From the IMG/VR virus record IMGVR_UViG_3300017963_000192, positions 124,001-188,000 of that record: DNA of 64,000 nucleotides. The stretch is one strand, 5' to 3'. Each line of letters opens with the position of its first letter. Position 1 is the first letter of the stretch. Below the pieces are notes generated by a model. It was not told the origin of the DNA, ran no database searches, and saw nothing but the letters and a program-made list of their open reading frames with translations. This document shows positions 1 to 53,277 of the stretch, piece by piece. A program made the translations under genes and the position numbers.

Positions 1-60
1 AAATTTTCTTAATATTTTGATAATCTAGGTCATTTTTTGCCTCCTTAACTTATAAGGTTC

Positions 61-89
61 AATTTATTATAAAAGTTACAGTTTGTCAA
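61..89 (-). promoter_or_regulatory. sigma70-like promoter firing out of the left window edge
   Basis: TTGACA (89-84), 17 nt, TAAATT (66-61); AAGGAGG RBS at 46-40. Confidence 0.5.
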
Positions 90-90
90 T

Positions 91-125
91 AAAAAAACCC
101 TTCTAAAAATAAGGAGGGTTTTTTT
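91..125 (-). terminator. intrinsic terminator closing the RNA array (possibly bidirectional)
   Basis: A7-CCCTTCT..AGGAGGG-T7 hairpin flanked by A and T runs, just downstream of the last pentamer tract. Confidence 0.75.
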
Positions 126-223
126 ATTGGTTTTCTGTTCAATTCTGCTCAATTCTTATCTCTTCTGTTCAGTTCTCGTCATATCTTTTCAGCTCTTGCC
201 ACCTCACTTCTTTTAACTAATTT

Positions 224-270
224 GACCAGCTAAGTAATGAACTTAGAAAACTTCTTTAAAAGTTCTGGTC
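224..270 (-). repeat. tRNA-like separator repeat (copy 4)
   Basis: GACCAG-AACUUU uaaa GAAGUU-uu-CUAAG uucauua CUUAG-CUGGUC. Confidence 0.8.
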
Positions 271-363
271 TTTTCTACTCTTAACTTCTCAGATCTAAAC
301 TATTCAAATCTCGTCTACTCTTAACTTGCCTGATCTAGTCTGTTCCTATCTTATAACTAATTT

Positions 364-410
364 GGGCAGTTAGGTAACGAACCTAATTAATTTCTTTAAA
401 AATTCTGCCC
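364..410 (-). repeat. tRNA-like separator repeat (copy 3)
   Basis: GGGCAG-AAUUUU uaaa GAAAUU-aa-UUAGG uucguua CCUAA-CUGCCC. Confidence 0.8.
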
Positions 411-518
411 TCCTCTGTTCTGGACAATTCTTTTCTTTCCTATTCTTTACTCATCAAAACTATCCTACTCTACTCATGTCTGCTCTTTTCTTCTCTCCTC
501 TTTCCATTTAACTAATTA

Positions 519-565
519 GGGCAGCCAAGTAATGAACTTGAACAATTCCTTTAAGAATTCTGCCC
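519..565 (-). repeat. tRNA-like separator repeat (copy 2)
   Basis: GGGCAG-AAUUCU uaaa GGAAUU-gu-UCAAG uucauua CUUGG-CUGCCC. Confidence 0.8.
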
Positions 566-704
566 TCTTTGCTATTCTTGTCTTCTCAGATCTAAACTAT
601 TCAATTCTCGTCTATTCTTAACTTGCCTGATCTAACCTGATCTTATCTTATAACTAATTTGGGCAGTGGAGGATTAGAACCTCCACTAACAAACCAAAGT
701 TATA

Positions 705-1448
705 TTAACCAACCTTTGCCCAATTCTTATCTTTGATAACTGGATTAAATGGTTCAATGGTGTCTGATGCAACAATGCCTTTAATTGAATATGTTCCATA
801 TGTTCCAGAATTTTCCGGTCTCCAGGCACCGTATCCAGATAATGCTCCAGCTTTTACTATTATCTCAGTCATTTGTTCTGGACTAATAACGTTTTCATCA
901 AAAGCAACTCTTAAATTTAAAGTCCAATCAGAAAACATTGCTCTGTAAAAAGGCACCAAACTCCCTTTCTTACCACCGAGATTTCCAAGTTCAATGCTTT
1001 TATCGTACTTTTTATATTTAATTGGAATTAAACCTCTCCTTGCTGTAGGAACTACAAAAATAGCCGCCTCTAATGCTTTTTTCATTTTTCTTCCTAGGAG
1101 ATTTTGACCAACATTTACAAACGATTTTTTAAATCCTATTGCAGGTACTCCTACTAAACCTTTTTTTTCATCGAGCCAATGAGCCTTTCCTTTACATTCC
1201 TCATCAGGGTCAACTGCTTTGGTTCTTTTAAGGATTTTATTTTTTTCTTTTTCAAAATCTTCTCTTCGCTCTTTTAAAAGATTTTTTGATTTTGCGTTTT
1301 GAAGAAGCTCTGTTTGCCCTTCAATAACAAACTCAATCCACGAAATAAATCGAGATGGCTCTATAATATTTAGATTATCTTTTACAGAGCCTCCCTTTTT
1401 TTCTGCTTTTTTGCCTAATTCTTGTACACTATCCTTTTTCTTTGGCAT
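705..1448 (-). CDS. stand-alone Cas7/RAMP-like RNA-binding protein (Vipr-like)
   Basis: RAMP-style motifs: N-terminal strand IEGQTELLQN, GVPAIGFKKS (cf. IPgsslKG), YRAMFSDW, Gly-rich loop GALSGYGAWRPENSGTYGTY; GAGG RBS. Confidence 0.75.
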   Translation of the reverse strand: MPKKKDSVQELGKKAEKKGGSVKDNLNIIEPSRFISWIEFVIEGQTELLQNAKSKNLLKERREDFEKEKNKILKRTKAVDPDEECKGKAHWLDEKKGLVGVPAIGFKKSFVNVGQNLLGRKMKKALEAAIFVVPTARRGLIPIKYKKYDKSIELGNLGGKKGSLVPFYRAMFSDWTLNLRVAFDENVISPEQMTEIIVKAGALSGYGAWRPENSGTYGTYSIKGIVASDTIEPFNPVIKDKNWAKVG

Positions 1449-1474
1449 AATTAATTCCTCCTGCTAATTTAATA

Positions 1475-2101
1475 TTAAATCAAAGGCTCATATTCATTCA
1501 CAATTTCTTGTAAAATACTAATCACCTTTTTTAATCTTTTTTCTATTGCTATAAAATGTAAATTTGCTTCACAATCATTTATAAGTGCTTTAGCTAATTT
1601 AACATATTGTAATGCTTGTTTCTTATCATCTATAATTATATCCGATAAATATTGAATCCTTTTATATTTTTTGTTAGATGTTGTTTTTACTCCATGAGAG
1701 CTATATTGAACAGGTATCTCTTTAAGAGAGTGTTTTATTATTTTATTGGCTGGTGCTTTTATTCTTGGTATAGGAACAAATGTAATAGACCTTTCTAATT
1801 GAGATATTTCTCTTGAAACATAAAGCAAATGCCCTTTCTTTTTATCCATAGTTAGAAGCTTGTGTATTTCTCTAAAATTATTAGAATCATATTGCTTTAT
1901 TAACATCTTTGCTATTTCTTTTGTAGTTTCTGCTCCAGTTTCATTTAAAAATTTGTAATAATCTTCTATACAAAGATTTTCATCAATATTTTTGCTTATC
2001 GCTTTTTTATGAAAAAAACTTTCTTCTTTGAACTTCCAACTTTTAATTTCGATTCCAATGTCATTTAGTTCTTTTTTTATAGACGATGTAAACTTAACCA
2101 T
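1475..2101 (-). CDS. conserved phage protein, putative partner of the Cas7-like protein
   Basis: co-oriented 26 nt upstream of the RAMP gene; IHKLLTMDKKKGHLLY..ISQLERSI resembles the LHxxFEWDDxxAAxxYRxxQARxLIRSI family I recall beside such genes. Confidence 0.55.
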   Translation of the reverse strand: MVKFTSSIKKELNDIGIEIKSWKFKEESFFHKKAISKNIDENLCIEDYYKFLNETGAETTKEIAKMLIKQYDSNNFREIHKLLTMDKKKGHLLYVSREISQLERSITFVPIPRIKAPANKIIKHSLKEIPVQYSSHGVKTTSNKKYKRIQYLSDIIIDDKKQALQYVKLAKALINDCEANLHFIAIEKRLKKVISILQEIVNEYEPLI

Positions 2102-2123
2102 TAATTGTCCCCTAATATAATGT

Positions 2124-2160
2124 GTACATTAAATATACATTACTATTATCCAATAGTCAA
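2124..2160 (-). promoter_or_regulatory. sigma70-like promoter for the RAMP operon
   Basis: TTGACT (2160-2155), 17 nt, TATATT (2137-2132); shares 20 nt with the promoter at 6926-6962. Confidence 0.7.
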
Positions 2161-2178
2161 GTATTTTTTAAAAAAATT

Positions 2179-2246
2179 AAAAACCACCTTCTTATAAGAG
2201 GGTGTTTTTTTAACTAAAAAAACCCCCCTGTTTCCAGAGGGGTTTT
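2179..2246 (-). terminator. tandem intrinsic terminators after the major capsid gene
   Basis: two GC hairpins (CACCTTCTTATAAGAGGGTG; CCCCCCTG..CAGAGGGG), each with an A-run on the + strand. Confidence 0.7.
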
Positions 2247-2277
2247 GTTAAAGACTAAATTATATCGTAGTTAGAAT

Positions 2278-3444
2278 TTATGAACTCATCCAGCCAGGTA
2301 TAGTAGCTGAAGATTTAACAGCACACGCAACCGAACGTGGGTTAACAATTACTTGACTGATTTGCTCAAGGAATAACCATCCATAGGCTGGCTGGTTAAA
2401 CACGAACATATCAGCAGGAAGTACTGTAAGCTCTACCCTTATAGGCATTGCTCCAAGATATCTTCCTTCTGTAACAGCGAAGATAACGCCTTCAGGAACT
2501 GAAACGTTTTCAATTCCAGCTTCGTCAACACCCGCAGTTACGAATATGTTAACGCCCCAAATACTTCCAAAAATACCTGTTAAGAGAAGATCTCTTGAGG
2601 TAATTGGATCGTAATCGATTGCGTTGATGTTTTTCTTCAAGTCACCAAGTTCCGCCCTATTCATAATGAACTTGTCAACAAGTAATCTGTGTCTTTCAAC
2701 TTCGTATTGAAGTGTTTCAAGAACAGATTTGCTTATTGTTGAAGTAACATTAATCTGTGAGTTCTCAAGCGTAGATGCTTGGTAAAGCTCTTTAAGACCA
2801 TTTCTATCTTCTTTCAGCATAATCTGAAAGGTGGTCTTGTCGTGTGTTCTGTCTACGATGTCATACTGTCTTTGTGCTATCTCTGAGATAGTGATGATTG
2901 GTCGTGCAGTTACTAAGAATTCAGGTGGGAAAATCCTGTTTCCTTTAACTACAGTCTCAACTGTCTGACCATCTTCTTGGATAATAAGAGCAGTAACGTT
3001 TACGTCTTTTTCATAGGAGTTAATCTGACCTTGTGCCAGATTGTGAGTCCTATATACCTGTCTGATGAATCCTTCATAGTCTAGTCTATCAAGGATGAGT
3101 GGAATCATCTCTGCTCCAAATCGTAGCCTTTCAGCTTCGTCTGCCGCAAATACAGACTCAACGATTCTTTGCTTTTCTTCTGGAGTGTAAAAAGATTGTG
3201 CTTGTTTTCCTGGTCTCTGATACTGTGCTCGAAGTCCTGCGAACTTCATTTGCTGGTTTATTAAGTCTTGGTGATCATACGCATTAAGATTGCCTTTTGA
3301 GTCAAACATGTCTTCCTTGGATTCTACAAGTCTTCCGGCAGAGTTTTGTCCACCAAAAGATTTAGGGTTTAACAGCCTTTCGTCATATTTCTTTGCTATT
3401 GCAGCAGTTTTGACAGTTTTCTTTTCCATTTTTTCAGCCCACAT
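2278..3444 (-). CDS. major capsid protein (HK97 fold)
   Basis: 388 aa; PLILDRLDYEGFIRQV, RTHDKTTFQIMLKED, GIFGSIWGVNIFV, GWLFLEQISQVIVNPRSV; last gene of scaffold-decoration-capsid block; strong GGAGG RBS. Confidence 0.85.
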   Translation of the reverse strand: MWAEKMEKKTVKTAAIAKKYDERLLNPKSFGGQNSAGRLVESKEDMFDSKGNLNAYDHQDLINQQMKFAGLRAQYQRPGKQAQSFYTPEEKQRIVESVFAADEAERLRFGAEMIPLILDRLDYEGFIRQVYRTHNLAQGQINSYEKDVNVTALIIQEDGQTVETVVKGNRIFPPEFLVTARPIITISEIAQRQYDIVDRTHDKTTFQIMLKEDRNGLKELYQASTLENSQINVTSTISKSVLETLQYEVERHRLLVDKFIMNRAELGDLKKNINAIDYDPITSRDLLLTGIFGSIWGVNIFVTAGVDEAGIENVSVPEGVIFAVTEGRYLGAMPIRVELTVLPADMFVFNQPAYGWLFLEQISQVIVNPRSVACAVKSSATIPGWMSS

Positions 3445-3454
3445 AGTAGCCTCC

Positions 3455-4153
3455 TTATGATAATCTCATTTGAAATTGAAGTTCAGGATCGTTGGCTGAT
3501 GGAACCTTTGTTACGAATCCTATTGTGACACCAGTGCCACCTATAGTTGGAAGACCGTTTGCACTAACTGTAACTGCTGCATTTAATGCCCAAGCAGCGT
3601 CAGTTTCATAAGCCAATGTAGCAATCTCACCAGAACCTTCAATAATCGCAGCACGACCACTACCAAGAGTCTGATCTATTCCTGTTAGATTAGGATCTTG
3701 ATATCTATAGTCAATTAATACAGTTTCAGTTGCACCGATACTTGAACCACCTCCAGCGTGGGTAATTATACCATTAGTTGCATTAACAGTATAGTCAGTA
3801 GTTACGGTGTAAGCGGTTCCATCAGAATCTGTTACTCTAACTGATGCACTTTGGATATTTGCGTTATTCAAAGTTATTGTTGTACCAGAACCTGTAAATG
3901 TTCCACTTTCATCAATCACAGGACGATAGAAACTAGTAGTCTTGTGGCAGAAAAACATACCAATAATTTTAATGTCGGCTGTGTTATCTGCAACTTTAGC
4001 TAGTCCAGTAGTTCCATCAAGAGTTGCAATATAACCTGCAATGAAGTCCGCAGAAGAATCTACGTCTCTCCATCCAGATATTATGTTGCCGCTCAGTTTA
4101 CGAACAGAATTAACAATTCCATTCCTCCCGATTGGGGGCAATACTGTACTCAT
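3455..4153 (-). CDS. head decoration/cement protein with inserted beta-rich domain
   Basis: between scaffold and capsid; Gly/Thr rich; DQTLGSGRAAI, IGFVTKVPS; insert TTDYTVNATNGIIT. Confidence 0.65.
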   Translation of the reverse strand: MSTVLPPIGRNGIVNSVRKLSGNIISGWRDVDSSADFIAGYIATLDGTTGLAKVADNTADIKIIGMFFCHKTTSFYRPVIDESGTFTGSGTTITLNNANIQSASVRVTDSDGTAYTVTTDYTVNATNGIITHAGGGSSIGATETVLIDYRYQDPNLTGIDQTLGSGRAAIIEGSGEIATLAYETDAAWALNAAVTVSANGLPTIGGTGVTIGFVTKVPSANDPELQFQMRLS

Positions 4154-13251: not shown

Positions 13252-13723
13252 TATGAAAAACTATTTTTTCTTTTGACTCCTCTTCAAGAGGAAAATCTTC
13301 ATATTTAAATATATCTGGCATATCTTCTGGGACATCAACAGTTTTTTTGTTTGATGCAACATCTAACATCTTTAAAATTTCATCATATATTTTAGGATTT
13401 GGATTTTTTACACCTAAACTTCTGGCTACTTCTTTAAATTTATCTAAATTAATAAAAGGAGATGCCTCTAATTCATTGTTTATAATGTATATATAAGCCT
13501 CTATATCATTTCTCCAATTAGGTAAATGCCCATACAAATTTTCTAGCTTTCCCCAAGTAACATCGTAGTATCGACTATCTGCTTTTCTATCTAATACTTT
13601 GTTTATAAGATTTGACAATCTTATTTCATCTCGTATCCGAGACGCTATGTCTCTTCTTTTTTTAGAAGATAACAATTTATTGATGTCTACAGCATTTCTA
13701 AAATTCATATTATAATTCCTCAA
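13229..13723 (-). CDS. putative internal head protein
   Basis: MNFRNAVDINKLL motif; RKAD site. Confidence 0.55.
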   Translation of the reverse strand: MRNYNMNFRNAVDINKLLSSKKRRDIASRIRDEIRLSNLINKVLDRKADSRYYDVTWGKLENLYGHLPNWRNDIEAYIYIINNELEASPFINLDKFKEVARSLGVKNPNPKIYDEILKMLDVASNKKTVDVPEDMPDIFKYEDFPLEEESKEKIVFHSEKHKGE

Positions 13724-16700
13724 ACGATTTTTTTAACTCATCATTTAATAGGTGTGGATAGTCAATCCATAATCTTAAATTTTCTACAAATATAAGTACT
13801 TCATCTGTTTCGTGACCGTTAAGACACTTACCATTGACATCCCACAACTTACCTTGTTTTAACTTATAATTAACTTCGGGACTATCCTTGAATTTTTCAC
13901 TTAATTTAAAACCTCTAGGATTATCTGGATCATCAGATATTGGTTCAATTTGATTGAAAACTTTGTATGTACTCATTTCTTCTTGAGATAAATCAAAATT
14001 GCTTTGTTTAAAAGCTTTTCTTATAACTTTTTCATTAGAGTCATTTACAACTGTTATATGTTTAAGTAGACTTTCAGTAAAACTACACTCTTCCATACCA
14101 ACCCAATTAGATATATAGAGATTTTTACCTTGATTAAAGACAGGAATCATTCCTTTCTTTTGAATTTTTTCATAAGAAAGAGTATTCCTAATTAAATTGT
14201 TTTTAGCATCTTTATCCGGTATATCACTATATTTCTTCTCTAGTTTTTCTTTTTGACTTGTCTCCCATTCCTCTAAATCAACAACATCTAACACAAAAAT
14301 TATATTATCATAATCTTTCTTTATAAACTTACCCACTTTATTTAAAAACCTAGAAAGTTGAGGAATATATTCAATAGGACAATCCTTTACATTTATTCCA
14401 GCTATTGAATGTGAACGATGTCTTTGAATATGAGGATCAACATTGTTTCCAAATTCTTCATCATCAAATCCTTCAATACAAGGATACATTATCAAAATTT
14501 CGTTTTTAGCAGAAATTATAGAACCTAGATTTCTACCTTTGCTTAACAATTGTTTAACACCATATCTTAAACCATCATTTTTAACGACATTACTTAATTT
14601 AACAGTATAAACCCCTTGTTCCTGGTACCCTTTTAACTGTCCGTATGCAAAGCAAGTGTTACCAAGATTTCTTAAATGTTTGAAAATTTCAGATTTATCT
14701 AAATTTGAAGATGCAAACATTTTAGTCCATTCCTCAAATTCTCTTGATAGCATTAAATCAGAATAATCTGTTAAATCATCACTATCAGAATAATATTCCT
14801 GATGTATAGGGTAGAATTCAGTAACGCTATATGAATGGAGTTTGCCTTGTTTATATAAATTGGTGAGTATTTTAGAAATATCTTCATTTTCTTGAAGTAT
14901 CCCCTCTTTAAAATCACCATTGCTCTTTTTATCAATCACACTTAATTTATTATTTAAATTAATTAGTAATAATTTAACTTCAGAAGGTATACTAGGTGAT
15001 TCAAGATTTTTGAACCAAGTATCATCATCAACAGGATGAAGATTTTTAGTTATTTCACTATCAAAGTCAGCTTCTTTAACTTTTATTTCTTCTGGACTTG
15101 GTTTAGCTGTTTCAACAGTTCCCTCTTTTCCAATAAATTCTCTTGATTCAGATTCTAAGTCTTCAATATCTTCTTTTGAAATTTCTTCTGTTTCTGCTGT
15201 TTTTTTCTTACCAAGTCCCAACTTGTCTTTAATCTTTGCCGTAACACTACCCGTAGGAGGAGGTGTTCCACCAAGAGGTGAGCCAACACCAGCAGCACTA
15301 CCAACTAATGGATGAATAAAAGCACCAATCTTTTCTTCGAGTTCTTTTTGTTTCTTTTTATTACTTAATTCGTCTTCTAAGCTCATCCCCATTAATTGAA
15401 GAAGTGTTATAGCACTTATAGGTCCTTTACCTTGAGCATAAACATTATTCATAAAAGTCATAAATGCTTGGTCGTCACGCATCATTAATTTTTTATGCCA
15501 TAGTATTTTAGGAACAATGAGACGTTCTTCTAATTCTCTTCCAGATCTACTTACTCTGTATTGTCCAACTAATTCTTTCTTGTCCCTTCTGTACCAATTA
15601 TTTTTCTCTGCCATTATTCTAAAAAATTTATCTTGTATCCAAAGTACTTGAAATAAGTCTCTTTTAGCTTTATACCTTGATAGCTGAACTTGAAGACCAA
15701 CATTTGCTGAATTATATGTTCCTACATTATCAACAAGATAGCTATGGCTGTTTTCAACAGTTAAATTATAAACTTTTTTAGTATTTTTAATCGATTCAAC
15801 AGATTTTACCATTAAATAAACATAATTATCATCAACAAATGCTTTTTGTCCTTTAAATTTATGAGAATCATCAAAGTCAAACGTGCATTCTTCTTCCCAA
15901 ATTAATTTTGCCAAATCAAATGCAAATTTACCATAAATATCGAGTCTAATAATTGGTTTTCTTTTATATTTTGAAGTTAAATTTCTCTTATTGTTATCTT
16001 GTATTGTCCAATTAACTGGAAAACCTATTTGAGCTAATATCAATTCGATTTGATTTGCTAAAATTTTTGAGGTGGTAGTAAAATGAACAGTATGTTGTCC
16101 ATTTCTTTTATTTATTTGATGACAACCATCCCCTCTAAAAATTCCTTTAATCAGTTCTTTCTTTAAATTTAAAGACCAGCCCATCACTTCTTTAGATAAT
16201 TGTTTTTTGTGAGAATATTCTCCAGCGTGTTTCTTAAACCAATTTACTTTATCTTTAACTATATTTTGAGTGATTGATCTTAAATGCAGTGCCCCTTGCT
16301 TGTTAGAAAAACTTGAAATTGGAATTCCTTCTATTGCACAAAGATTTGTTACATCATCTATGTATTTACTTTCATTTTCTCCAAAACATAATCTAATTCC
16401 ATGCAATTCTTTTGTGGTGTGGTGCTTTTCATAACAACCTTCAGCTATAAAATAACCAAGAAGTCTGGCTGATGTTTCTGTAGTATTTGTATCAACTTCT
16501 ACAAAATTTCTTGGAATCATTAAGTAATCCCATTGTTTGATTTCTTCTGCTTTTAATTTCTTAATAGGGTTATAATTTATAGGTAATCCACTTATATATT
16601 TTTTTCTAATTGTTGTCCTTCCTATATCTATTGGATTTAATTTAATTCTTGGTGATTTTCCAATAGAATGAGCGTAGAGTTTGCCCGCATTAACCTCACG

Positions 16701-18068
16701 ACCACATCCACACGCACATTTACGAGGCCATGTCCACACAGACCACTTGTGATTATCAGTACATTTAAACTTCTTTCCTCCCCAAAGGGTTATTTCAATT
16801 ATATTGTTAGGAATCCCCTCGTCCCAATTATCTGTAACTTTTTGTTCCATACCATCTTTATCAATAACAGAATCCCCTACTTCAATATCTTCAACGTTTT
16901 TATATCCTTGAGGAGTTGTGATTTTTGTACCTTTTGTAAAACAAGCATAAGTTGATTCCCCACTTAAAAATTGTTTTCCTACTCCAAGAGCAACCATTTT
17001 CTTCTCTGTAATGTCTGACCACTCTTTTTCAAGTCTCATAACCTTGTCTGCAACAGTAACATATTCAACATTTAAGCCATAATGATAGATTAAACTAAAG
17101 TTTGGGTCGAAAGTTGACTGTTGTAACATTTGAGCCAATGCTCTTTGGTGCGTTTCGTTAGGAATCCACCCCTTGTTAGCGTCACCTAGTTTAAAAATCT
17201 TTAAAGGATAGATAAAGTTGTCAGCAATTGTGATTTGAGCCTCTCTTAATTTGTCTTCGTACATCAAAAGCCTAAAAATTCGGCTTATTATTGAAGTTCC
17301 TCTAACATCATAAGGGTTACTTCTTCTTGCAATGTGTGTAACCTCATCTGGATCAAGTGTTATGTTTTTTCCTGTTAAAACTCTTCTAAAAACGTCTTGT
17401 GGGAGTCTTCCTTTAAGTCTTTGATCTTCGGGTTTTGTTGAATGTACTAAAGATTTAAGTTCATCGTCTGGTATAAGCTCAATTACGCTTTCCTGGTCTG
17501 CAAAAGGAGTGAATCTTACTTCAATAAAATCAGGATTATGAACTATAATATCTTCCCACATTCCAGTTTTACTGTTCCAAGGAGTGTGAATGAAAATTTC
17601 TCCAATTTTCATAAATTCCAAGTCTATTGCGGGTAATTTCGAGAAAAATCCTGTTTTTTCAATACATTCTTGAATATGTGTGTTAATATGAGGGTCATCA
17701 ACTACAATTTCTGCTTTTGAATAAGGTAATTCTGCATGAACATCTAAAACGGCTCCTACTAATTCATCATGATCGTAAAACCATCTACACCATCTATTTA
17801 TTTGCTTTAAAGTTCGTGGTAAATAAATAGCTGTGGTAGTAATCTCTGGATCATAGAATCTTCTGGAAGGATTTCTTAATATATTATTTCCCGCACCGTA
17901 TGCGGCAATTTGATTAAGAAGATTTCCACCACCTAATCCCAAAGATTGAAACTGACCACTCGTTCCTTTCTTAATTCTTTCCCTATCTGTTTCAGCATTA
18001 ATTGTTCTTGGTAACATATCCTGAAAACTTTCAGGTAAAGGAACATTTTCTTGATTGATTGTAGGCAT
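13710..18068 (-). CDS. portal protein with intein and long C-terminal extension
   Basis: WCRWFYDHDELVGAVLDVHAELP, THIARRSNPYDVRGTSII, PLKIFKLGD, GESTYA/SANVGLQ. Confidence 0.85.
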   Translation of the reverse strand: MPTINQENVPLPESFQDMLPRTINAETDRERIKKGTSGQFQSLGLGGGNLLNQIAAYGAGNNILRNPSRRFYDPEITTTAIYLPRTLKQINRWCRWFYDHDELVGAVLDVHAELPYSKAEIVVDDPHINTHIQECIEKTGFFSKLPAIDLEFMKIGEIFIHTPWNSKTGMWEDIIVHNPDFIEVRFTPFADQESVIELIPDDELKSLVHSTKPEDQRLKGRLPQDVFRRVLTGKNITLDPDEVTHIARRSNPYDVRGTSIISRIFRLLMYEDKLREAQITIADNFIYPLKIFKLGDANKGWIPNETHQRALAQMLQQSTFDPNFSLIYHYGLNVEYVTVADKVMRLEKEWSDITEKKMVALGVGKQFLSGESTYACFTKGTKITTPQGYKNVEDIEVGDSVIDKDGMEQKVTDNWDEGIPNNIIEITLWGGKKFKCTDNHKWSVWTWPRKCACGCGREVNAGKLYAHSIGKSPRIKLNPIDIGRTTIRKKYISGLPINYNPIKKLKAEEIKQWDYLMIPRNFVEVDTNTTETSARLLGYFIAEGCYEKHHTTKELHGIRLCFGENESKYIDDVTNLCAIEGIPISSFSNKQGALHLRSITQNIVKDKVNWFKKHAGEYSHKKQLSKEVMGWSLNLKKELIKGIFRGDGCHQINKRNGQHTVHFTTTSKILANQIELILAQIGFPVNWTIQDNNKRNLTSKYKRKPIIRLDIYGKFAFDLAKLIWEEECTFDFDDSHKFKGQKAFVDDNYVYLMVKSVESIKNTKKVYNLTVENSHSYLVDNVGTYNSANVGLQVQLSRYKAKRDLFQVLWIQDKFFRIMAEKNNWYRRDKKELVGQYRVSRSGRELEERLIVPKILWHKKLMMRDDQAFMTFMNNVYAQGKGPISAITLLQLMGMSLEDELSNKKKQKELEEKIGAFIHPLVGSAAGVGSPLGGTPPPTGSVTAKIKDKLGLGKKKTAETEEISKEDIEDLESESREFIGKEGTVETAKPSPEEIKVKEADFDSEITKNLHPVDDDTWFKNLESPSIPSEVKLLLINLNNKLSVIDKKSNGDFKEGILQENEDISKILTNLYKQGKLHSYSVTEFYPIHQEYYSDSDDLTDYSDLMLSREFEEWTKMFASSNLDKSEIFKHLRNLGNTCFAYGQLKGYQEQGVYTVKLSNVVKNDGLRYGVKQLLSKGRNLGSIISAKNEILIMYPCIEGFDDEEFGNNVDPHIQRHRSHSIAGINVKDCPIEYIPQLSRFLNKVGKFIKKDYDNIIFVLDVVDLEEWETSQKEKLEKKYSDIPDKDAKNNLIRNTLSYEKIQKKGMIPVFNQGKNLYISNWVGMEECSFTESLLKHITVVNDSNEKVIRKAFKQSNFDLSQEEMSTYKVFNQIEPISDDPDNPRGFKLSEKFKDSPEVNYKLKQGKLWDVNGKCLNGHETDEVLIFVENLRLWIDYPHLLNDELKKSFEEL
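15711..16943 (-). mobile_element. LAGLIDADG intein in portal (411 aa)
   Basis: CFTKGT..KCTDNHKW..LLGYFIAEG..GIFRGDG..VGTYN|S. Confidence 0.9.
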
Positions 18069-26360: not shown

Positions 26361-28547
26361 ATGGCGTATTCACCACCAGCAAATCAACAAGAATCTAATG
26401 AGGGTTTAATTGCTGAGATTAAACTTGGTAGTTTAACAGATGTTAATTTATATTTAAATGATGGGACTTATCCAGCAGATCCAGACTCAAGAGATACAGA
26501 CAATAAAACAGCATTAATGGTAAGTGCTGTTAATTCTCATACTGACCAACCAGACATTACAAATGCTTTATTAGGAAAGGGGGCTGACCATTCTCTTACA
26601 GATAGTGTTGAGGGTAGAACAGCAATGCATTGGTCAGCAGTTGGAAACATGGCACAAACAGCAGAGAATTTAGCTGATGGTGGTTACACAACCCTCGACC
26701 AGACTGATAATGATGGTAACACAGAACTTCATGTTTGTTGTATATATGATGGGCACAATGTTGCTGGTTTTCTTTTAGATACAACATATTGGACTAGTCC
26801 ACCAAATCCAGCTAACATTGAATATTCTAATACCGATACTCACACACCTTACTTGGCATGTGCTAAAAACGATTCTCCTAATACTATTCCAGTTTTAGAT
26901 GGAAAAGGTGCAAACGTATCTGCTACGGATACTAATGGATATAATGCAATGATCATTGCTGCCAGAAACAGTTCTGCAAATGTAATCGCCCCTTTAAAGA
27001 CTGCTGGAACAAGTATCACTTTTAAAGATGGGAATGATAGAAATGCTCTTATGCATTGTGGAATGGTTGATTCATCTTCTGCCGTTGTTGCGGCTTTAAT
27101 TTCTGAAGGAATTCCTAAAGATATATATGACAATGCAACAGACAAAAAAACTGCATTAATGTATGCTGCTGAATATGATGCCTCTACTTCAGGTGTAGCA
27201 ATGATTAACAATAATGTTAATCCAGAAACTTTAGGTAATTATAATTTTACGGCATTACTTTGGGCTGCTTATTATGATAGTGGAGATTTCATAACTTCGG
27301 TGAATGGTTTGGTTAATCTCGATGCAGTAGGGTTGGTTAGTTTTTTAAGTCCTACAACAATTTTAAGCACTACTGAATGGGATGCTTTGTGGATTGCAAC
27401 ATATCAAGAATCTGATAATGCTATTCCTTCTTTGATAGATATAGGTATGGATGTTGATGCCGTTGATACAGGTCATCCTACATCTGAAACAATATTGATG
27501 TTTGCTTCAAGAAATATGAAACCGGATTCAATTACAGCTCTCATAGACAAAGATGCAACCTTTAAAAAGAGAGATGATATTGGTAGGATAGCTATGCATT
27601 TTGGACTAGAGACTAGGGATTTACCAACTATTAATGCATTGATAAATCATCCTGATTTAGATCCTAATACAAAAGATTTGAATGGAGTATCATTGCTAAT
27701 GACGGCTGCTGAATATGATTTATCAACAATAATACCAACATTAATAACAAAAGGAGTCGCTCTTTCTACAAAAGACAATTCTGGTAAGACAGCGTTAATG
27801 TACGCATCCAAAGAAGGCAATATAGCATCTGTTACAGCATTAGTAACTGGTGGAGCAAGTTTAGATTCTAGAGATTTTAGTGATAATACTGCACTTCTTA
27901 TTGCAGCAGATATGAATGGAAAAGGTCACAAAGATGTTGTTGAATATTTAATTAATCAAGGAGCTAATGTTAATGCAAGTAATAATAGAAATCAAACGGC
28001 ATTGATGTGGGCAGCTAAGAAAAACTATACAGATACTATAACATTATTGATAAATAACGATGCTGACTATACTAAAATAGATGATAAAGAATGGACTGCT
28101 CTTAAATGGGCTATCGAATGGGGTAGTAGCAATGCTGAAACTTTATTGCGAACTTACATGAATCCTGAAGCAGAGATTCAAGTAAGACAGAGTGAAACTA
28201 TTTACGTTTCTGGAGAATCTGTGTATGATTTTGGTGAAATTGTAGCAGGAAACTCTGGTGAGGCTATCTCATTTAGAATTTTAAATCACGGTACTTCTGA
28301 TCTAGAAATAGAATATGTTTATACTGAGAGTAATGTGTTTGTTATAAATACAACATCTATGGCAACAACGATTGCTCCAAATGGTGAGACATCTTTTACA
28401 ATAACATTTGCTCCACCAATCATAGAAGATCCAGATAGTGTGAGTGCGGCTCAATATAGGGATACTATAAAGATATCTAACAATGATGTAGATGAAGGTA
28501 TGTTTGAGTTTGATGCTTTTGGTACTGCTTTGGAGCCGGAGGCATAA
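26361..28547 (+). CDS. ankyrin-repeat protein with C-terminal Ig-like (choice-of-anchor D/ASH-like) domain
   Basis: many GxTALMxA repeats; C-terminal YDFGEI..FRILNHGTSDLEI..TIAPNGETSFTITFAP..ISNNDVDEG.FEF..G. Confidence 0.85.
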   Translation: MAYSPPANQQESNEGLIAEIKLGSLTDVNLYLNDGTYPADPDSRDTDNKTALMVSAVNSHTDQPDITNALLGKGADHSLTDSVEGRTAMHWSAVGNMAQTAENLADGGYTTLDQTDNDGNTELHVCCIYDGHNVAGFLLDTTYWTSPPNPANIEYSNTDTHTPYLACAKNDSPNTIPVLDGKGANVSATDTNGYNAMIIAARNSSANVIAPLKTAGTSITFKDGNDRNALMHCGMVDSSSAVVAALISEGIPKDIYDNATDKKTALMYAAEYDASTSGVAMINNNVNPETLGNYNFTALLWAAYYDSGDFITSVNGLVNLDAVGLVSFLSPTTILSTTEWDALWIATYQESDNAIPSLIDIGMDVDAVDTGHPTSETILMFASRNMKPDSITALIDKDATFKKRDDIGRIAMHFGLETRDLPTINALINHPDLDPNTKDLNGVSLLMTAAEYDLSTIIPTLITKGVALSTKDNSGKTALMYASKEGNIASVTALVTGGASLDSRDFSDNTALLIAADMNGKGHKDVVEYLINQGANVNASNNRNQTALMWAAKKNYTDTITLLINNDADYTKIDDKEWTALKWAIEWGSSNAETLLRTYMNPEAEIQVRQSETIYVSGESVYDFGEIVAGNSGEAISFRILNHGTSDLEIEYVYTESNVFVINTTSMATTIAPNGETSFTITFAPPIIEDPDSVSAAQYRDTIKISNNDVDEGMFEFDAFGTALEPEA

Positions 28548-35762: not shown

Positions 35763-38700
35763 ATGAATAAGAATGTTTTCAAAACAGCATTTCAAGAGTT
35801 TATATTCGTTAGAACTTATTCTAGATGGTTAGATAAAGAAAACAGAAGAGAGACTTGGGAAGAAGCAGTAGATCGTTATTGTACATATATGAAAGAAAAG
35901 CATGGAGATAAAATATCAGATAAAGAATATAAGGATGTGCATGATTCCATTTTAAATATGGAAGTAATGCCATCAATGAGAGCTATGTGGGTTGCAGGGA
36001 AAGCTTTAGACATTGAAAACTTTTCTGGTTACAATTGTTTGGGAGAAGATACTGAATTTGTTACAGATAAGGGTGTCAAATCTTTCAGAGATTTTAAAGA
36101 CGGTGATAAGATTGTTGTTTTAACTCATAAAAACAATTGGAAGAAAGCTGTAGTTAAAAACTTCGGAAAGCAGAAACTAAACAAGATTACGTATGGTCTT
36201 GGAGGAAGAGGATTAGACAACATTGTCTATGCTACAGAGGATCACAGGTGGTTTTTGAATGATTCTGAAGAAGTTGTTACAGAAATAAAAGAAAAAGATA
36301 ATCTTTTAAAAAGTTGTTACAGAAAAACTTTTGATTTTGATTCTGCAACTCCAGAAGAAAAAACATATTGGTGTTATGGTTTTGTTTATGGAGATGGGAC
36401 TAAAATAAAAAGAAATGGAGAATATAAGCATAGTTTGGTAAGATTATTAGGTGATAAAAAAATATATTTAAATCGTTTTGAAGAAGTTGGTTTTAAAACG
36501 TCTGTGTCGGACAGTATAGATGGGGGTTGTTATGCTTATACTGGAGAATATTTAAAAACGTTACCTAAAATTGAAAAAGAGCCTTTGGGGAAAATAGAGG
36601 CTTTTGTAGACGGTCTTCTTTGTGCAGATGGAGGTAGAAAATATGTAAAAGACAATTTCTATTTTTGCAACATTCAGCAATCTGGAGAGGAGGGTATTAG
36701 TTTTATAAGAAAAGCTTTTCCTATGTGTGGTTATTTTATTGTTAGAGAGGATGATTATACTGGTGAGACTACTAATTATGGAGAAAGAAATAAAACAATA
36801 AGATTTTCTTTTAACAATCCTTACGCTACAGAGTACAATTCGTTGTATACTGTAAGAAAAATTGATGTTAGTTATAAAGAAGAGGATGTTTGGTGTCTTG
36901 TTGTTGAAGATGATAAAAGTTTTGTTTTGAAGAATGGATTAGTCACAGGAAATTGTGCTTTTACAACAATACAAAATCTAAAGGATTTTGCTGAAATACT
37001 TTATATTTTAATGAATGGTACTGGTGTTGGTTTTTCTGTAGAAAGAAAGTTTGTTAATAACCTTCCTTTAATACAGGAAGTAAATACCAACGAGGCAAAA
37101 GAAATGATAACCTTTGCAGATAGTAAATTGGGGTGGGCTAAAGGTTATGAAAAAGTTTTGAATTGTTTATGGAACGGAATTGACTTTGAGTGTGATTACA
37201 GCAAGATTCGACCAAGGGGTTCTCGATTAAAAACATTTGGTGGACGAGCTTGTCTTACAGGCAATACTGTTGTATACAAAGATAGGAAGAAAAGTAGAGG
37301 TTGCAACGAGATTACTATTAAAGATCTTTATGATATGAAGGTTTCAGGTAAAAGAAAACATTTTTCTGAAAGCAATCAACCTGGACCATCCCATTTTAAT
37401 AAGGTAAAATTGCGTTCTTTAGACGAAGAATCTGGAGTATTTTTTAGAAATCAATTAATAGATGTTGTTGACAATGGTGTTGCTCCTATATTTGAAATAG
37501 TAACTGAAAGTGGTTATAAAATCAAAGCAACTTCTAATCACAGATTTATGAAAGATACAGGAGAATGGTGTTATGTATCTGATTTTTCAAACGGAGATTT
37601 GATTGCTATTAATGGTTCTAAAGAAAAGAAGACAGGTGTTTGCATTGATTGTGGTATATTTGTTAGTAGGAGAGCTATAAGATGCAGATCTTGTGCCAAT
37701 AAAAATCAACAAAAAAATGATTGTTTGCCCACAACTGTTAGACAAAGAAAAGAATGTCAAAAAGATAAAAAAGATTTTTGTGAATTGTGTAAACACAATG
37801 GTTCAGTTAGTAAACTTCAAGTTCACCACAAAGACGGAAATCCTTATAACAATAAAAAAGAGAACAAGCAAACTTTATGTGAAAAATGCCACAGAAAAGA
37901 AGATGCTAGACGAACTACTTTTGGTAATCCTTACTCTCATAGATATTTATCTTATGATAAAATAGTTTCTGTTGACTATGTAGGTAAAGAGCAGGTTTAT
38001 GATTTGGTTATGGAGGCTCCTAACCATAATTTCGTAGCTAACGGGTTTGTTTCACACAACAGTGGTCCAGAACCTCTTAAAAATCTTGTTGATTTCACCA
38101 CAGATATAGTTGAACAAAATAGGGGTTATAGAATTCAACCTATAGACGCACACGATATTTGCTGTAAAATAGCAGAAATTGTTGTGGTTGGAGGAACTCG
38201 CAGAAGTGCTTTGTTAAGTTTATCTGATTTAACTGATAATCAAATGGCTCACGCTAAATCTGGAGAATTTTGGAATACAGCACCACAAAGGTCAATGTCA
38301 AATAACAGCGTTTCTTATACAAGAAAACCTGATATGGTTTCATTTTTGGATGAATGGAAAAATCTTTATAAGTCAAAGAGTGGGGAACGAGGGTTTTTTA
38401 ATAGAGTTGCTACTCAAAAAAAAGCTAGTGAGAATGATAGGAGAGATGGTTCTAAAGTTATTGGAACTAATCCTTCATTGAGAAAAGGAACAAAAATAAT
38501 AACAACGGATGGTCTTTTAAACATAGAAGATTTAGAAGGTAAAGAATTTGATATTATTAATCTTAATGGAAAAGTGAGTAAAGCTAAATGTTGGTTATCT
38601 GGTAAAAGCAAAAAATTATACCGAGTTAAATTTGTTGGAGGACACGAATATTATTGTACTGCTGAACACAAGTGGCCTGTTTATGAAGATGGTGAATATT

Positions 38701-52815: not shown

Positions 52816-53277
52816 ATGAATTTTGAACCGCCTGTTGGATATAGGGTGTTAATTATAAGGACTTTAGAAAGAGGTCACGAAATTAAGTATTATCAAGATG
52901 GGAAAGTATTTACATTAGAAAAAGCATTAGAAATAGTTAAGGTAGCAATCCCTATGTTAACTCCAAACAGAGAAGAGAAAAGACAAAACGGTAGACGTTT
53001 CAAAGAAGACGGTGAAGAAATGTTTACTTTAACTGCTCAAGATCAGCATGGAGTGATGGTTAAGGATGAAGCTATTCCTAAAAGAAGAATAAGAAGACTT
53101 ACCCCTAAAGAATGTGAACGTTTGATGGGATTGGAAGATGATTGGACGAGATGGGGTATTGATGAAGATGGTAATGAATATGAAGTCTCGGATACACAAC
53201 GCTATCGGATGGCTGGAAATGGTGTTGTAGTAGACGTTGTAAGAGAGATTATAAGGAGATTGGTTAATGCAAGTTGA
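52816..53277 (+). CDS. C-terminal fragment of a C5-cytosine methyltransferase
   Basis: RRLTPKECERLMG (motif IX), QRYRMAGNGVVV (motif X); no motif I or PC motif. Confidence 0.7.
   Translation: MNFEPPVGYRVLIIRTLERGHEIKYYQDGKVFTLEKALEIVKVAIPMLTPNREEKRQNGRRFKEDGEEMFTLTAQDQHGVMVKDEAIPKRRIRRLTPKECERLMGLEDDWTRWGIDEDGNEYEVSDTQRYRMAGNGVVVDVVREIIRRLVNAS

What the first reader, a model, noticed from the sequence alone, without database searches (positions are those of the whole stretch)
131..647. Decoded NN strings predict gapped targets; tracts 1 and 3 are diverged versions of one guide
Seen (+ strand NN). 568-647: TT AT TG TC GA AA AT AT CG AT TA TG GA AA GA TA. 271-350: TT AC TA TC GA AA AT AA CG AC TA TG GA AG GT TA. 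These are identical at 10 of 16 positions and the rest differ by one base. 411-505: CC GT GG AT TT TT AT TT CA AA AT AC AC TG GC TT TC CC TT. 131-210: TT GT AT GC AT TA CT GT GT CG TA TT GC TG CC CT. Inference: if every third target base is skipped, the targets are about 48-57 bp. The paired tracts may track two alleles of one locus, which suggests duplication-and-mutation rather than spacer acquisition. Read as the first two codon positions, 131-210 gives a hydrophobic peptide (F/L-V-I-A-I-Y-L-V-V-R-Y-L-A-W/C-P-L), consistent with wobble skipping but unproven. I saw no obvious target in this window by eye.
Basis: partly seen in the sequence, partly recalled or inferred. Interest (0 to 1): 0.8.

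Follow-up and report, generated by a model that had tools for sequence, protein, structure and literature searches.

The report
VIPR guide-RNA array, jumbo phage
The periodic tracts are four guide RNAs of a VIPR system, a phage-borne relative of CRISPR first described in 2026; this copy sits in a marine-sediment jumbo phage and uses an unusual A-G-A repeat motif, and I found no target for it.

Summary
On the minus strand, window 131-647 holds four tracts of 16, 19, 16 and 16 pentamers of the form G-A-N-N-A. G is present in 67 of 67 units.

The tracts lie at the 3' end of an operon: promoter-like site, 208-aa gene, 247-aa gene, four scaffold-plus-tract units, terminator. The 247-aa protein is a Vipr, a minimal Cas7-like RAMP.
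- It matches phrog_4652, the family of the SUSP1 Vipr.
- BLASTP against the characterised SUSP1 Vipr gives E 3e-12.
- Its model's top five AlphaFold-cluster matches are the five founding Vipr entries named in the VIPR preprint.

So this is a VIPR locus (bioRxiv 10.64898/2026.04.26.720920). In that family the NN dinucleotides read double-stranded DNA, skipping every third base.

It departs from the type case in three ways:
- The motif is A-G-A/NN instead of GGY/NN, and the protein's G1-contact residues are replaced to match.
- The tracts are separated by three-way-junction scaffolds.
- A 208-aa gene of unknown fold travels with the module.

I found no target above background, and no RNA data exist. 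It is a new, divergent member of a known kind.

The parts
2219..2246 (-). Terminator-like hairpin after the major head gene (2281-3444, minus). It separates the head gene from the VIPR operon.
   Evidence: major head protein phrog_2522 E 5e-53
2132..2160 (-). Sigma-70-like promoter candidate (10 of 12 consensus positions) upstream of the 208-aa gene. A consensus match only.
1478..2101 (-). 208-aa gene, a candidate accessory gene (vap-like). It is 42% identical to the gene directly upstream of vipr in the related phage G001, where the module lies in a different genomic context.
   Evidence: No Pfam, PHROG or PADLOC hit. AF2 model poor, pLDDT 47.5.
708..1448 (-). vipr, 247 aa: a minimal Cas7-like RAMP. 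Residue equivalents to SUSP1 Vipr: R169 = R138, W209 = W178, R210 = R179, A208 = D177, N51 = H17.
661..721 (-). Leader scaffold: a three-way junction overlapping the 3' end of vipr. Hairpin III has a T-loop-like 7-nt loop.
   Evidence: weak tRNA hit of 19.4 bits, E 0.33
648..660 (-). Conserved unpaired linker (AAAUUAGUUAUAA) directly 5' of the tract
519..567 (-). Three-way-junction scaffold S_a
506..518 (-). Linker
411..505 (-). vrRNA tract T3, 19 units
364..410 (-). Three-way-junction scaffold S_b
351..363 (-). Linker
271..350 (-). vrRNA tract T2, 16 units; a diverged duplicate of T4 (10 of 16 NN identical)
224..270 (-). Three-way-junction scaffold S_c. Its closing stem is GACCAG/CUGGUC, compensatory to GGGCAG/CUGCCC in the other scaffolds.
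211..223 (-). Linker
131..210 (-). vrRNA tract T1, 16 units. It is followed directly by the terminator, with no scaffold.
87..129 (.). Bidirectional intrinsic terminator: 18-nt arms, with an A-run on one side and a T-run on the other. It ends the operon.

Best explanation
Window 87-2160 (minus strand) is a complete VIPR (Viral Interference Programmable Repeat) operon of a roughly 218-kb marine-sediment jumbo phage. It encodes a candidate accessory gene, the vipr gene and an array of four vrRNAs. By analogy with the characterised SUSP1 system, Vipr protomers bind one pentamer each along the RNA. They sequester the constant trinucleotide (here A-G-A, in which only the central G, the equivalent of G2, is invariant). 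They present the two variable bases, which pair with double-stranded DNA while every third target base is skipped. The four guides would therefore specify targets of 47, 56, 47 and 47 bp, most probably inside protein-coding genes of a competing phage, satellite or prophage, and binding would silence transcription. T4 and T2 are duplicates that have diverged only at positions corresponding to codon position 1, so they most likely track two variants of one protein-coding target whose coding sense equals the RNA sense. Shown here: the anatomy, the identity of the protein, the conservation of the module in a second phage, and the co-variation between protein and motif. Inferred: expression, processing, the 1-nt-skip rule for this subtype, the kind of target and the outcome.
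For: Protein identity:
- phrog_4652 at E 3e-15. The same PHROG matches an Ounavirinae protein flanked by YNNGG tracts at E 2e-87.
- BLASTP to SUSP1 Vipr YP_009199429.1 gives E 3e-12.
- AF2 model at pLDDT 87.6. The top PDB matches are Cmr4, Csm3 and type VII Cas7.
- The top five AFDB-cluster matches are X1U2U4, A0A0F9A1L0, A0A661D0E2, A0A2D6XG06 and A0A1F4YLN4, the five founding Vipr entries listed in the preprint.

RNA:
- 67 of 67 pentamers carry the invariant G, with hypervariable NN, and the periodicity is unique in the genome.
- A blind DNA-pattern scan for G-periodic tracts in IMG/VR recovered loci of which at least 11 carry a Vipr-family gene next to the tract.

Co-variation:
- The G1-contact residues H17 and D177 are kept in both GGY loci examined.
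- They are N51 and A208 here, and A in the second AGA locus (its N-terminal piece was not aligned, so the H17 position is unknown there).
- The G2 contacts R138, W178 and R179 are kept here.

Conservation:
- Phage G001 (major head protein 85% identical) carries the same three-part module elsewhere in its genome. Its vipr is 57% identical.
- Its tracts use the same G-A-N-N-A units and the same scaffold and linker, but the NN strings are unrelated.

Codon phase:
- The T4/T2 differences split 6:0 between the first and second N, and the implied changes are conservative only in the sense reading.
- This parallels the invariant codon position 2 reported for SUSP1 targets.

Other:
- No self-target, as reported for the family.
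- Two U-G pairs in the scaffold stems fit transcription of the minus strand.
Against: - No natural target was found in the phage's own genome, the related phage, IMG/VR, JGI metagenomes or GTDB genomes. The few core-pattern hits extend to only 21-23 of 32 positions, which is chance level.
- No RNA run holds this sequence, so expression and the ends of the mature RNAs are unknown.
- The constant trinucleotide has a purine at position 3, whereas the SUSP1 pocket is said to exclude purines. The decoding geometry could therefore differ in this subtype.
- Positions 2 and 5 are not strictly constant (76% and 78% A).
- The last tract has no scaffold on its 3' side, unlike the type II vrRNAs, which end in a 3' tail.
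Confidence: 0.85

Rival explanations
1. It is a VIPR-family locus but uses a different code or target class in this subtype. Possibilities are a different skip length, a contribution to recognition from the semi-variable positions 2 and 5, or RNA rather than DNA targets.
For: The motif is A-G-A rather than GGY, with a purine where SUSP1 excludes purines. The pocket residues differ (S204 and Y206 against C173 and V175). Three of the ten T4/T2 differences lie at position 2, and two of them sit next to an NN change. No 1-skip target was found.
Against: The 6:0 split of NN differences between the first and second N requires a constant codon phase. Only a 1-nt skip (a 3-nt target period) gives that. 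If the guides have the same sense as the coding strand, as the conservative substitutions suggest, they cannot pair with the mRNA. The other skip rules also gave no hit in the phage's own genome.
Confidence: 0.08
2. It is a decaying or orphaned array that no longer guides anything: a relic of a VIPR module.
For: No target was found. In the related phage G001 the vipr reading frame carries an in-frame TAA.
Against: Here vipr is intact and all family-invariant residues are present. All 67 units keep the G. All four scaffolds fold and show compensatory changes. The locus has no base differences in the pieces recovered from runs filed as three separate samples (the tool warns that the two full-length holders may be the source sample or one data set filed twice). 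Failure to find a target is expected for an uncultured sediment phage whose competitors are poorly sampled.
Confidence: 0.05
3. It is a protein-sponge or attenuator RNA with phased NAG/AGA triplets, like the (G/U)AG repeats bound by the TRAP ring. The NN would then be mere spacers.
For: In another register the tracts read as NAG triplets with 2-nt spacers, which resembles TRAP sites (my own knowledge of TRAP; sequence).
Against: There is no TRAP homologue in the phage. A Vipr gene lies directly upstream in the same operon, and this pairing recurs across many unrelated viral contigs. Spacer-only positions would not show the codon-phase pattern.
Confidence: 0.02

Closest known systems
Type II VIPR of Escherichia phage SUSP1 (Vipr YP_009199429.1, vap1 and four vrRNAs; bioRxiv 10.64898/2026.04.26.720920, .720927 and 10.64898/2026.10.15.759431)
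   Same: A homologous small RAMP protein. An array of about 100-nt RNAs made of 5-nt repeats, each with a constant trinucleotide and two hypervariable bases. The array lies directly downstream of the protein genes on the same strand. The locus is phage-borne and minimal, without cas genes or CRISPR repeats. There is no self-targeting. Several guides sit in one array. The residues that contact G2 are conserved.
   Different: - The constant trinucleotide is A-G-A, not G-G-Y. The G1 contacts are replaced (H17 to N51, D177 to A208).
- Tracts have 16-19 units, against the published 9-16.
- The structured element is a three-way junction plus a 13-nt linker placed 5' of every tract, instead of a 3' pseudoknot tail. 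The last tract ends at a terminator.
- The neighbouring gene (208 aa) lies upstream of vipr and was not found to be related to vap1: it gave no PHROG hit, whereas the vap1-position gene of the SUSP1-like locus L119 is phrog_5926.
- Vipr has an N-terminal extension of about 30 residues modelled at low confidence.
- The host and the targets are unknown.
VIPR variants with NNNGG, YNNNG or NNNNG repeats, and ribozyme-interspersed or staggered arrays (same preprint, Methods and figs S17-S19)
   Same: In the authors' register this array reads A-N-N-A-G, so it falls in their NNNNG class. Structured elements between the guides recall their interspersed arrays.
   Different: The interspersed element is not a hammerhead or any other Rfam family. 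I could not see the figures or the type assignments, so I could not assign this locus to a type.
Class 1 CRISPR backbone subunits (Cas7 family: Csm3, Cmr4, type VII Cas7) with crRNA
   Same: The fold is shared (Foldseek probability 1.00, E about 1e-6). Both work by one protomer per periodic RNA segment, with thumb-induced base flipping.
   Different: The period is 5 nt with only 2 pairing bases, against 6 nt with 5 pairing bases. There are no CRISPR repeats, no Cas1/Cas2 and no other cas genes. The guides appear to evolve by duplication and point change, not by spacer acquisition.

Membership tests
VIPR system | A Vipr protein: a small single-RRM RAMP with G-loop and thumb, structurally nearest to the founding Vipr entries | tested here: met
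   AF2 pLDDT 87.6. The AFDB-cluster top five are the five UniProt entries named as the founding hits. The PDB top hits are Cas7-family subunits. The G-rich loop is at residues 200-218.
VIPR system | Sequence homology to an experimentally characterised Vipr | tested here: met
   BLASTP to SUSP1 Vipr gives E 3e-12 and 33% identity over 76 residues. Both belong to phrog_4652. HMMER finds 1443 representative proteins at E <= 0.001.
VIPR system | vrRNA: tandem pentanucleotide repeats in which a conserved trinucleotide alternates with hypervariable NN | tested here: met
   67 units. G is invariant, the flanking positions are 76-78% A, and NN uses all 16 dinucleotides. The consensus is A-G-A, not GGY, which places it in the authors' NNNNG class.
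VIPR system | vrRNAs lie in the intergenic DNA flanking vipr, in a minimal locus without cas genes or CRISPR repeats | tested here: met
   The array starts 47 nt after the vipr stop codon on the same strand, between a promoter-like site and a terminator. PADLOC finds no Cas models beyond a faint Csx21 hit elsewhere in the window.
VIPR system | A structurally conserved constant element caps the variable tract | tested here: met
   Seven scaffolds in two phages fold to one three-way junction. Nine of 12 predicted consensus pairs have compensatory changes. Its position (5' of every tract) differs from the 3' tail of type II.
VIPR system | Residues that hold the conserved G (R138, W178, R179 in SUSP1) are present | tested here: met
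   R169, W209 and R210. The G1 contacts H17 and D177 are replaced by N51 and A208, in step with the loss of G1 from the motif.
VIPR system | An accessory vap gene in the operon | tested here: inconclusive
   The 208-aa gene travels with vipr in two phages. It has no detectable domain and a poor structural model.
VIPR system | vrRNAs are expressed as RNAs of about 100 nt and co-purify with Vipr | not testable with these tools
   Only DNA metagenome runs hold the sequence.
VIPR system | NN read double-stranded DNA with a 1-nt skip; natural targets lie in competing mobile elements | tested here: inconclusive
   No target above background. Indirect support comes from the codon-phase pattern between T4 and T2.
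CRISPR array | Identical direct repeats separating unique contiguous spacers, with cas genes nearby | tested here: not met
   The unique parts are themselves 5-nt periodic. The inter-tract elements are diverged copies: the three-copy family ranges from 61% to 90% identity and their stems carry compensatory changes. No cas operon was found.
TRAP-type phased-triplet binding site | About 11 (G/U)AG triplets with 2-3-nt spacers, and a TRAP (PF02081) protein | tested here: not met
   No PF02081 match in the phage genome, while the control search rings in Bacillus subtilis. The tracts have 16-19 units.
Hammerhead-interspersed vrRNA array | A hammerhead ribozyme between the guides | tested here: not met
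   No Rfam family at gathering score in the window, and no ribozyme at E <= 5 in positions 1-800.

The most novel reading that the evidence does not exclude
This locus would represent a distinct VIPR subtype, seen so far only in two related marine-sediment jumbo phages. In it Vipr recognises an A-G-A trinucleotide, with a purine at position 3 and only G2 read specifically. The constant handle would be a 5' three-way junction with a tRNA-like T-loop, which might recruit host tRNA-processing enzymes to cut the array. The 208-aa protein would be a new accessory factor. If the altered pocket also changes how the guide is presented, the recognition code itself could differ from the published 1-nt skip.
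Probability: 0.2. Interest if true: 0.6.

Novelty: new member of a known kind. Interest (0 to 1): 0.4.

Why it matters
VIPR was described only in 2026, and the mechanistic work rests on two closely related type II systems (SUSP1 and P. fulva).

This locus is a divergent natural variant in which the constant RNA motif and the protein residues that read it have changed together: G1 to A, with H17 to N and D177 to A. That gives a ready-made test of how Vipr decodes its repeat, and of whether the scaffold motif can be re-engineered.

It also extends VIPR to jumbo phages from marine sediment. The module moves as a three-gene-plus-array cassette between related phages whose major head proteins are 85% identical, while the guide strings turn over completely.

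The pair T4/T2 is a clear example of guides diversifying by duplication and point change at positions that correspond to codon position 1.

Tried and rejected
1. Rfam at gathering score over the whole window, and at E <= 5 over positions 1-800. Only terminator look-alikes and a weak tRNA-like hit in the leader; no ribozyme.
2. A scan for the linker plus G-period pattern in IMG/VR: 0 hits. A scaffold-plus-linker pattern found only the related phage G001.
3. The search for related loci with the Vipr protein: nothing. The word-indexed protein searches found only the query itself, for both Vipr and the 208-aa protein.
4. Target searches under the 1-skip rule:
   - the phage's own genome at skips 0-3, with shuffled nulls;
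   - the window with up to 3 mismatches;
   - the merged T4/T2 full pattern in IMG/VR;
   - the 10-unit T4/T2 core in JGI metagenomes, GTDB genomes and IMG/VR. The three hits extend to only 21-23 of 32 positions, which is chance;
   - T1 and T3 with R/Y degeneracy at the first N, in IMG/VR;
   - all fetched loci, about 1.07 Mb;
   - the complete related phage G001 with up to 3 mismatches;
   - G001's two guides against this phage.
   All were negative.
5. A TRAP-like sponge idea, rejected.
6. CRISPR-array and microsatellite readings, rejected on anatomy. Most of the 116 hits of the generic G-period scan were low-diversity tandem repeats.
7. Structure of the 208-aa protein: pLDDT 47.5, so it was not used. 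The ESM Atlas look-alikes were uninformative.
8. Laying DNA contigs from four metagenome runs on positions 1-3500. The array is identical wherever it was recovered, so there is no microdiversity to exploit, and no RNA runs exist.
9. The preprint's supplementary files are not held, so I could not assign a VIPR type.

Full report
**What is in the sequence**

The window is bases 124001-188000 of a 217.7-kb IMG/VR virus record with 31% G+C. Positions 131-647 are best read on the minus strand.

Four tracts (647-568, 505-411, 350-271, 210-131) consist of 16, 19, 16 and 16 pentamers. Over all 67 units:
- position 1 is G in 67;
- position 2 is A in 51;
- position 5 is A in 52 and T in 14;
- positions 3-4 use all 16 dinucleotides.

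A 16/16 periodic C on the plus strand occurs nowhere else in the genome, and no shorter solo tract exists.

Tracts 647-568 (T4) and 350-271 (T2) share 10 of 16 NN. The similarity runs into the flanks: 90% identity over 102 nt.

**Surroundings**

Every tract is preceded by an element of about 47 nt plus a conserved unpaired linker of 13 nt. The four elements here, and three in a related phage, each fold on their own into the same three-way junction: a closing stem of 5-6 bp and two hairpins.
- In the consensus fold, 9 of 12 pairs show compensatory changes, for example GGGCAG/CUGCCC against GACCAG/CUGGUC.
- Two U-G pairs fit transcription of the minus strand.
- The first element overlaps the end of the upstream ORF.
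- The last tract runs straight into a bidirectional terminator at 87-129.

Upstream on the same strand lie a 247-aa ORF (708-1448) and a 208-aa ORF (1478-2101). A promoter-like site sits at 2160-2132 and a terminator at 2246-2219, which closes the major head gene at 2281-3444. The unit is therefore a self-contained operon next to the head module of a phage. Rfam finds no known family.

**The protein**

The 247-aa ORF matches phrog_4652 (E 3e-15). By tblastn it hits only hypothetical proteins, mostly of Ounavirinae phages.
- The best of these loci, in Shigella phage vB_SflM_004, has the same PHROG (E 2e-87) and is flanked by YNNGG tracts.
- HMMER over 1.84 billion representative proteins finds 1443 relatives at E <= 0.001, typically of about 200 aa.
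- An AlphaFold2 model built on 73 of them has pLDDT 87.6.
- Foldseek against the PDB returns Cas7-family backbone subunits only: Cmr4, Csm3 and type VII Cas7, at probability 1.00.
- Against the AlphaFold clusters, the five best matches are X1U2U4, A0A0F9A1L0, A0A661D0E2, A0A2D6XG06 and A0A1F4YLN4.

**Literature**

A full-text search found three 2026 preprints from one group describing VIPR systems.
- Vipr is a minimal RAMP found by structure search. Its founding hits are exactly those five UniProt entries.
- vrRNAs are 9-16 YNNGG repeats followed by a structured tail. The NN pair with double-stranded DNA while every third base is skipped, and the skipped base usually falls on the codon wobble position.
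- Natural targets are satellites, prophages and rival VIPR systems. Binding silences transcription.
- The Methods note alternative NNNGG, YNNNG and NNNNG repeats and variable array architectures.
- Cryo-EM shows one protomer per repeat. G1 is read by H17 and D177. G2 is held by R138 and W178. Y3 sits in a pocket that excludes purines.

I fetched the SUSP1 locus. Its Vipr (YP_009199429.1) aligns to the window's protein at E 3e-12.

**Variant features**

In the authors' register this array reads A-N-N-A-G, so the invariant G corresponds to G2. The alignment agrees:
- R138, W178 and R179 correspond to R169, W209 and R210 here;
- the G1 contacts H17 and D177 are N51 and A208.

The same pattern holds across loci that I found blind, with a DNA scan for G-periodic tracts in IMG/VR.
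- At least 11 of those loci carry a Vipr-family gene beside the tract.
- Their constant trinucleotides differ: GGY, AGY, AGT, TGT, TGC, GTG.
- H and D at the two G1-contact positions occur together only in the two GGY loci. One TGC locus keeps the D alone.

This is co-variation between protein and RNA motif. It supports the register assignment.

**A second copy**

The nearest relative of the protein (57% identity) lies in a complete 252,876-bp phage, G001, whose major head protein is 85% identical to the one here.
- Its VIPR module has a 214-aa gene 42% identical to the 208-aa gene here, then vipr, then two 10-unit G-A-N-N-A tracts with the same scaffold and linker.
- The module lies about 135 kb from the head gene, in a different neighbourhood.
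- The 208-aa gene therefore belongs to the module and is a candidate accessory gene. It has no recognisable domain and a poor structural model.
- The NN strings of the two phages are unrelated, so the guides turn over fast.
- G001's vipr is interrupted by an in-frame TAA.

**Targets**

I found no target above background under the 1-skip rule. The places searched were:
- the phage's own genome, also at skips 0, 2 and 3, with shuffled-guide nulls;
- the window;
- G001;
- all fetched loci;
- IMG/VR;
- JGI metagenomes;
- GTDB genomes.

The three hits to a 10-unit core extend to only 21-23 of 32 positions. The collection scans accept only exact pattern matches. The published criterion of at least 80% NN identity could therefore not be applied at scale.

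**Internal evidence for the code**

T4 and T2 differ at ten bases: three at position 2, six at position 3 (the first N), none at position 4 (the second N) and one at position 5. The 6:0 split has p = 0.03.
- Read as codon positions 1-2 in the RNA sense, the six changes are conservative: S/T, L/F, I/V twice, I/L-F and H-Q/Y, with mean BLOSUM62 +1.58.
- In the antisense reading they are not (mean -1.17).

A constant codon phase along 16 units requires a 3-nt target period, which means a 1-nt skip. The preprints report the same signature in targets: invariant second codon positions. The sample is small, but it points to two variants of one protein-coding target, read on the DNA, with the guide in the coding sense.

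**Processing**

Every tract here and in G001 has a scaffold plus linker on its 5' side. A 3' scaffold is present for all tracts except the last one here, which has the terminator instead. G001 ends with an extra scaffold.

The simplest reading has three parts:
- the scaffold and linker mark where each guide begins;
- any stable 3' structure caps the guide;
- the enzyme that cuts the array is unknown.

The leader's T-loop-like hairpin gives only a weak tRNA hit (19.4 bits, E 0.33). Only DNA runs from sediment and seawater metagenomes hold the sequence.

**Verdict**

This is a genuine VIPR locus. It is a new and divergent member of a family described in 2026. Its A-G-A motif, three-way-junction scaffold and unknown accessory gene are worth a specialist's attention. 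Its targets, its expression and the code for this subtype remain untested.

Noticed in passing
L122:3602-4384 (same record as L127; G001, about 93.5-94.3 kb): The vipr of the related jumbo phage is split by an in-frame TAA at L122:3845-3847. The 81-aa ORF before it aligns with the N-terminus of the window's Vipr and the rest follows in the same frame. It could be a pseudogene, a read-through or an assembly error. Its two vrRNA tracts are intact.
   Followed up: partly
G001:C1:228579-229736 against L122 (record 89912-98295): The three-part VIPR module lies next to the head gene here but about 135 kb from it in G001. The head proteins are 85% identical, whereas Vipr is 57% and the 208/214-aa protein 42% identical. 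The module therefore moves, or evolves much faster than the core genome.
   Followed up: partly
window 660-714 (minus): Hairpin III of the leader scaffold has a T-arm-like sequence (GGUUCUAAUCC) and gives a weak tRNA hit (19.4 bits, E 0.33, below the gathering score). The internal scaffolds have a 5-nt loop (UCAUU or UCGUU) instead. Processing by tRNA enzymes is possible but untested.
   Followed up: no
L107:6551-7040, L051:11360-12852, L054 and L112, L065/L078/L095, L072/L012, L017: Other IMG/VR contigs carry Vipr genes with non-GGY pentamer motifs (AGY, AGT, TGT, TGC, GTG) and other layouts. L107 has six tracts separated by only about 11 nt. In L065 and L078 the tracts are on the strand opposite to vipr. 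The G-loop residue at the D177 position varies with the motif.
   Followed up: partly
L089:1047-1121: An A-G-A-like pentamer tract (15 units, several repeated) with no Vipr-family ORF in the 6.1 kb held. It could be a solo vrRNA or an unrelated repeat.
   Followed up: no
window 53267-59050, 35763-41573, 13710-18068: Three very long ORFs are intein-laden. One is a family A DNA polymerase fused to a uracil-DNA-glycosylase domain, with several intein, LAGLIDADG and HNH insertions. One is a ribonucleotide reductase alpha chain with inteins. The third is a 1452-aa protein with an intein.
   Followed up: no
window 26361-28547: A 728-aa protein with many ankyrin repeats and an Ig-like domain, which is unusual cargo for a phage.
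   Followed up: no
G001:C1:239964-240230 and 243703-244593: The related phage has two further, more distant major-head-like genes (49% and 30% identity) besides the orthologue.
   Followed up: no
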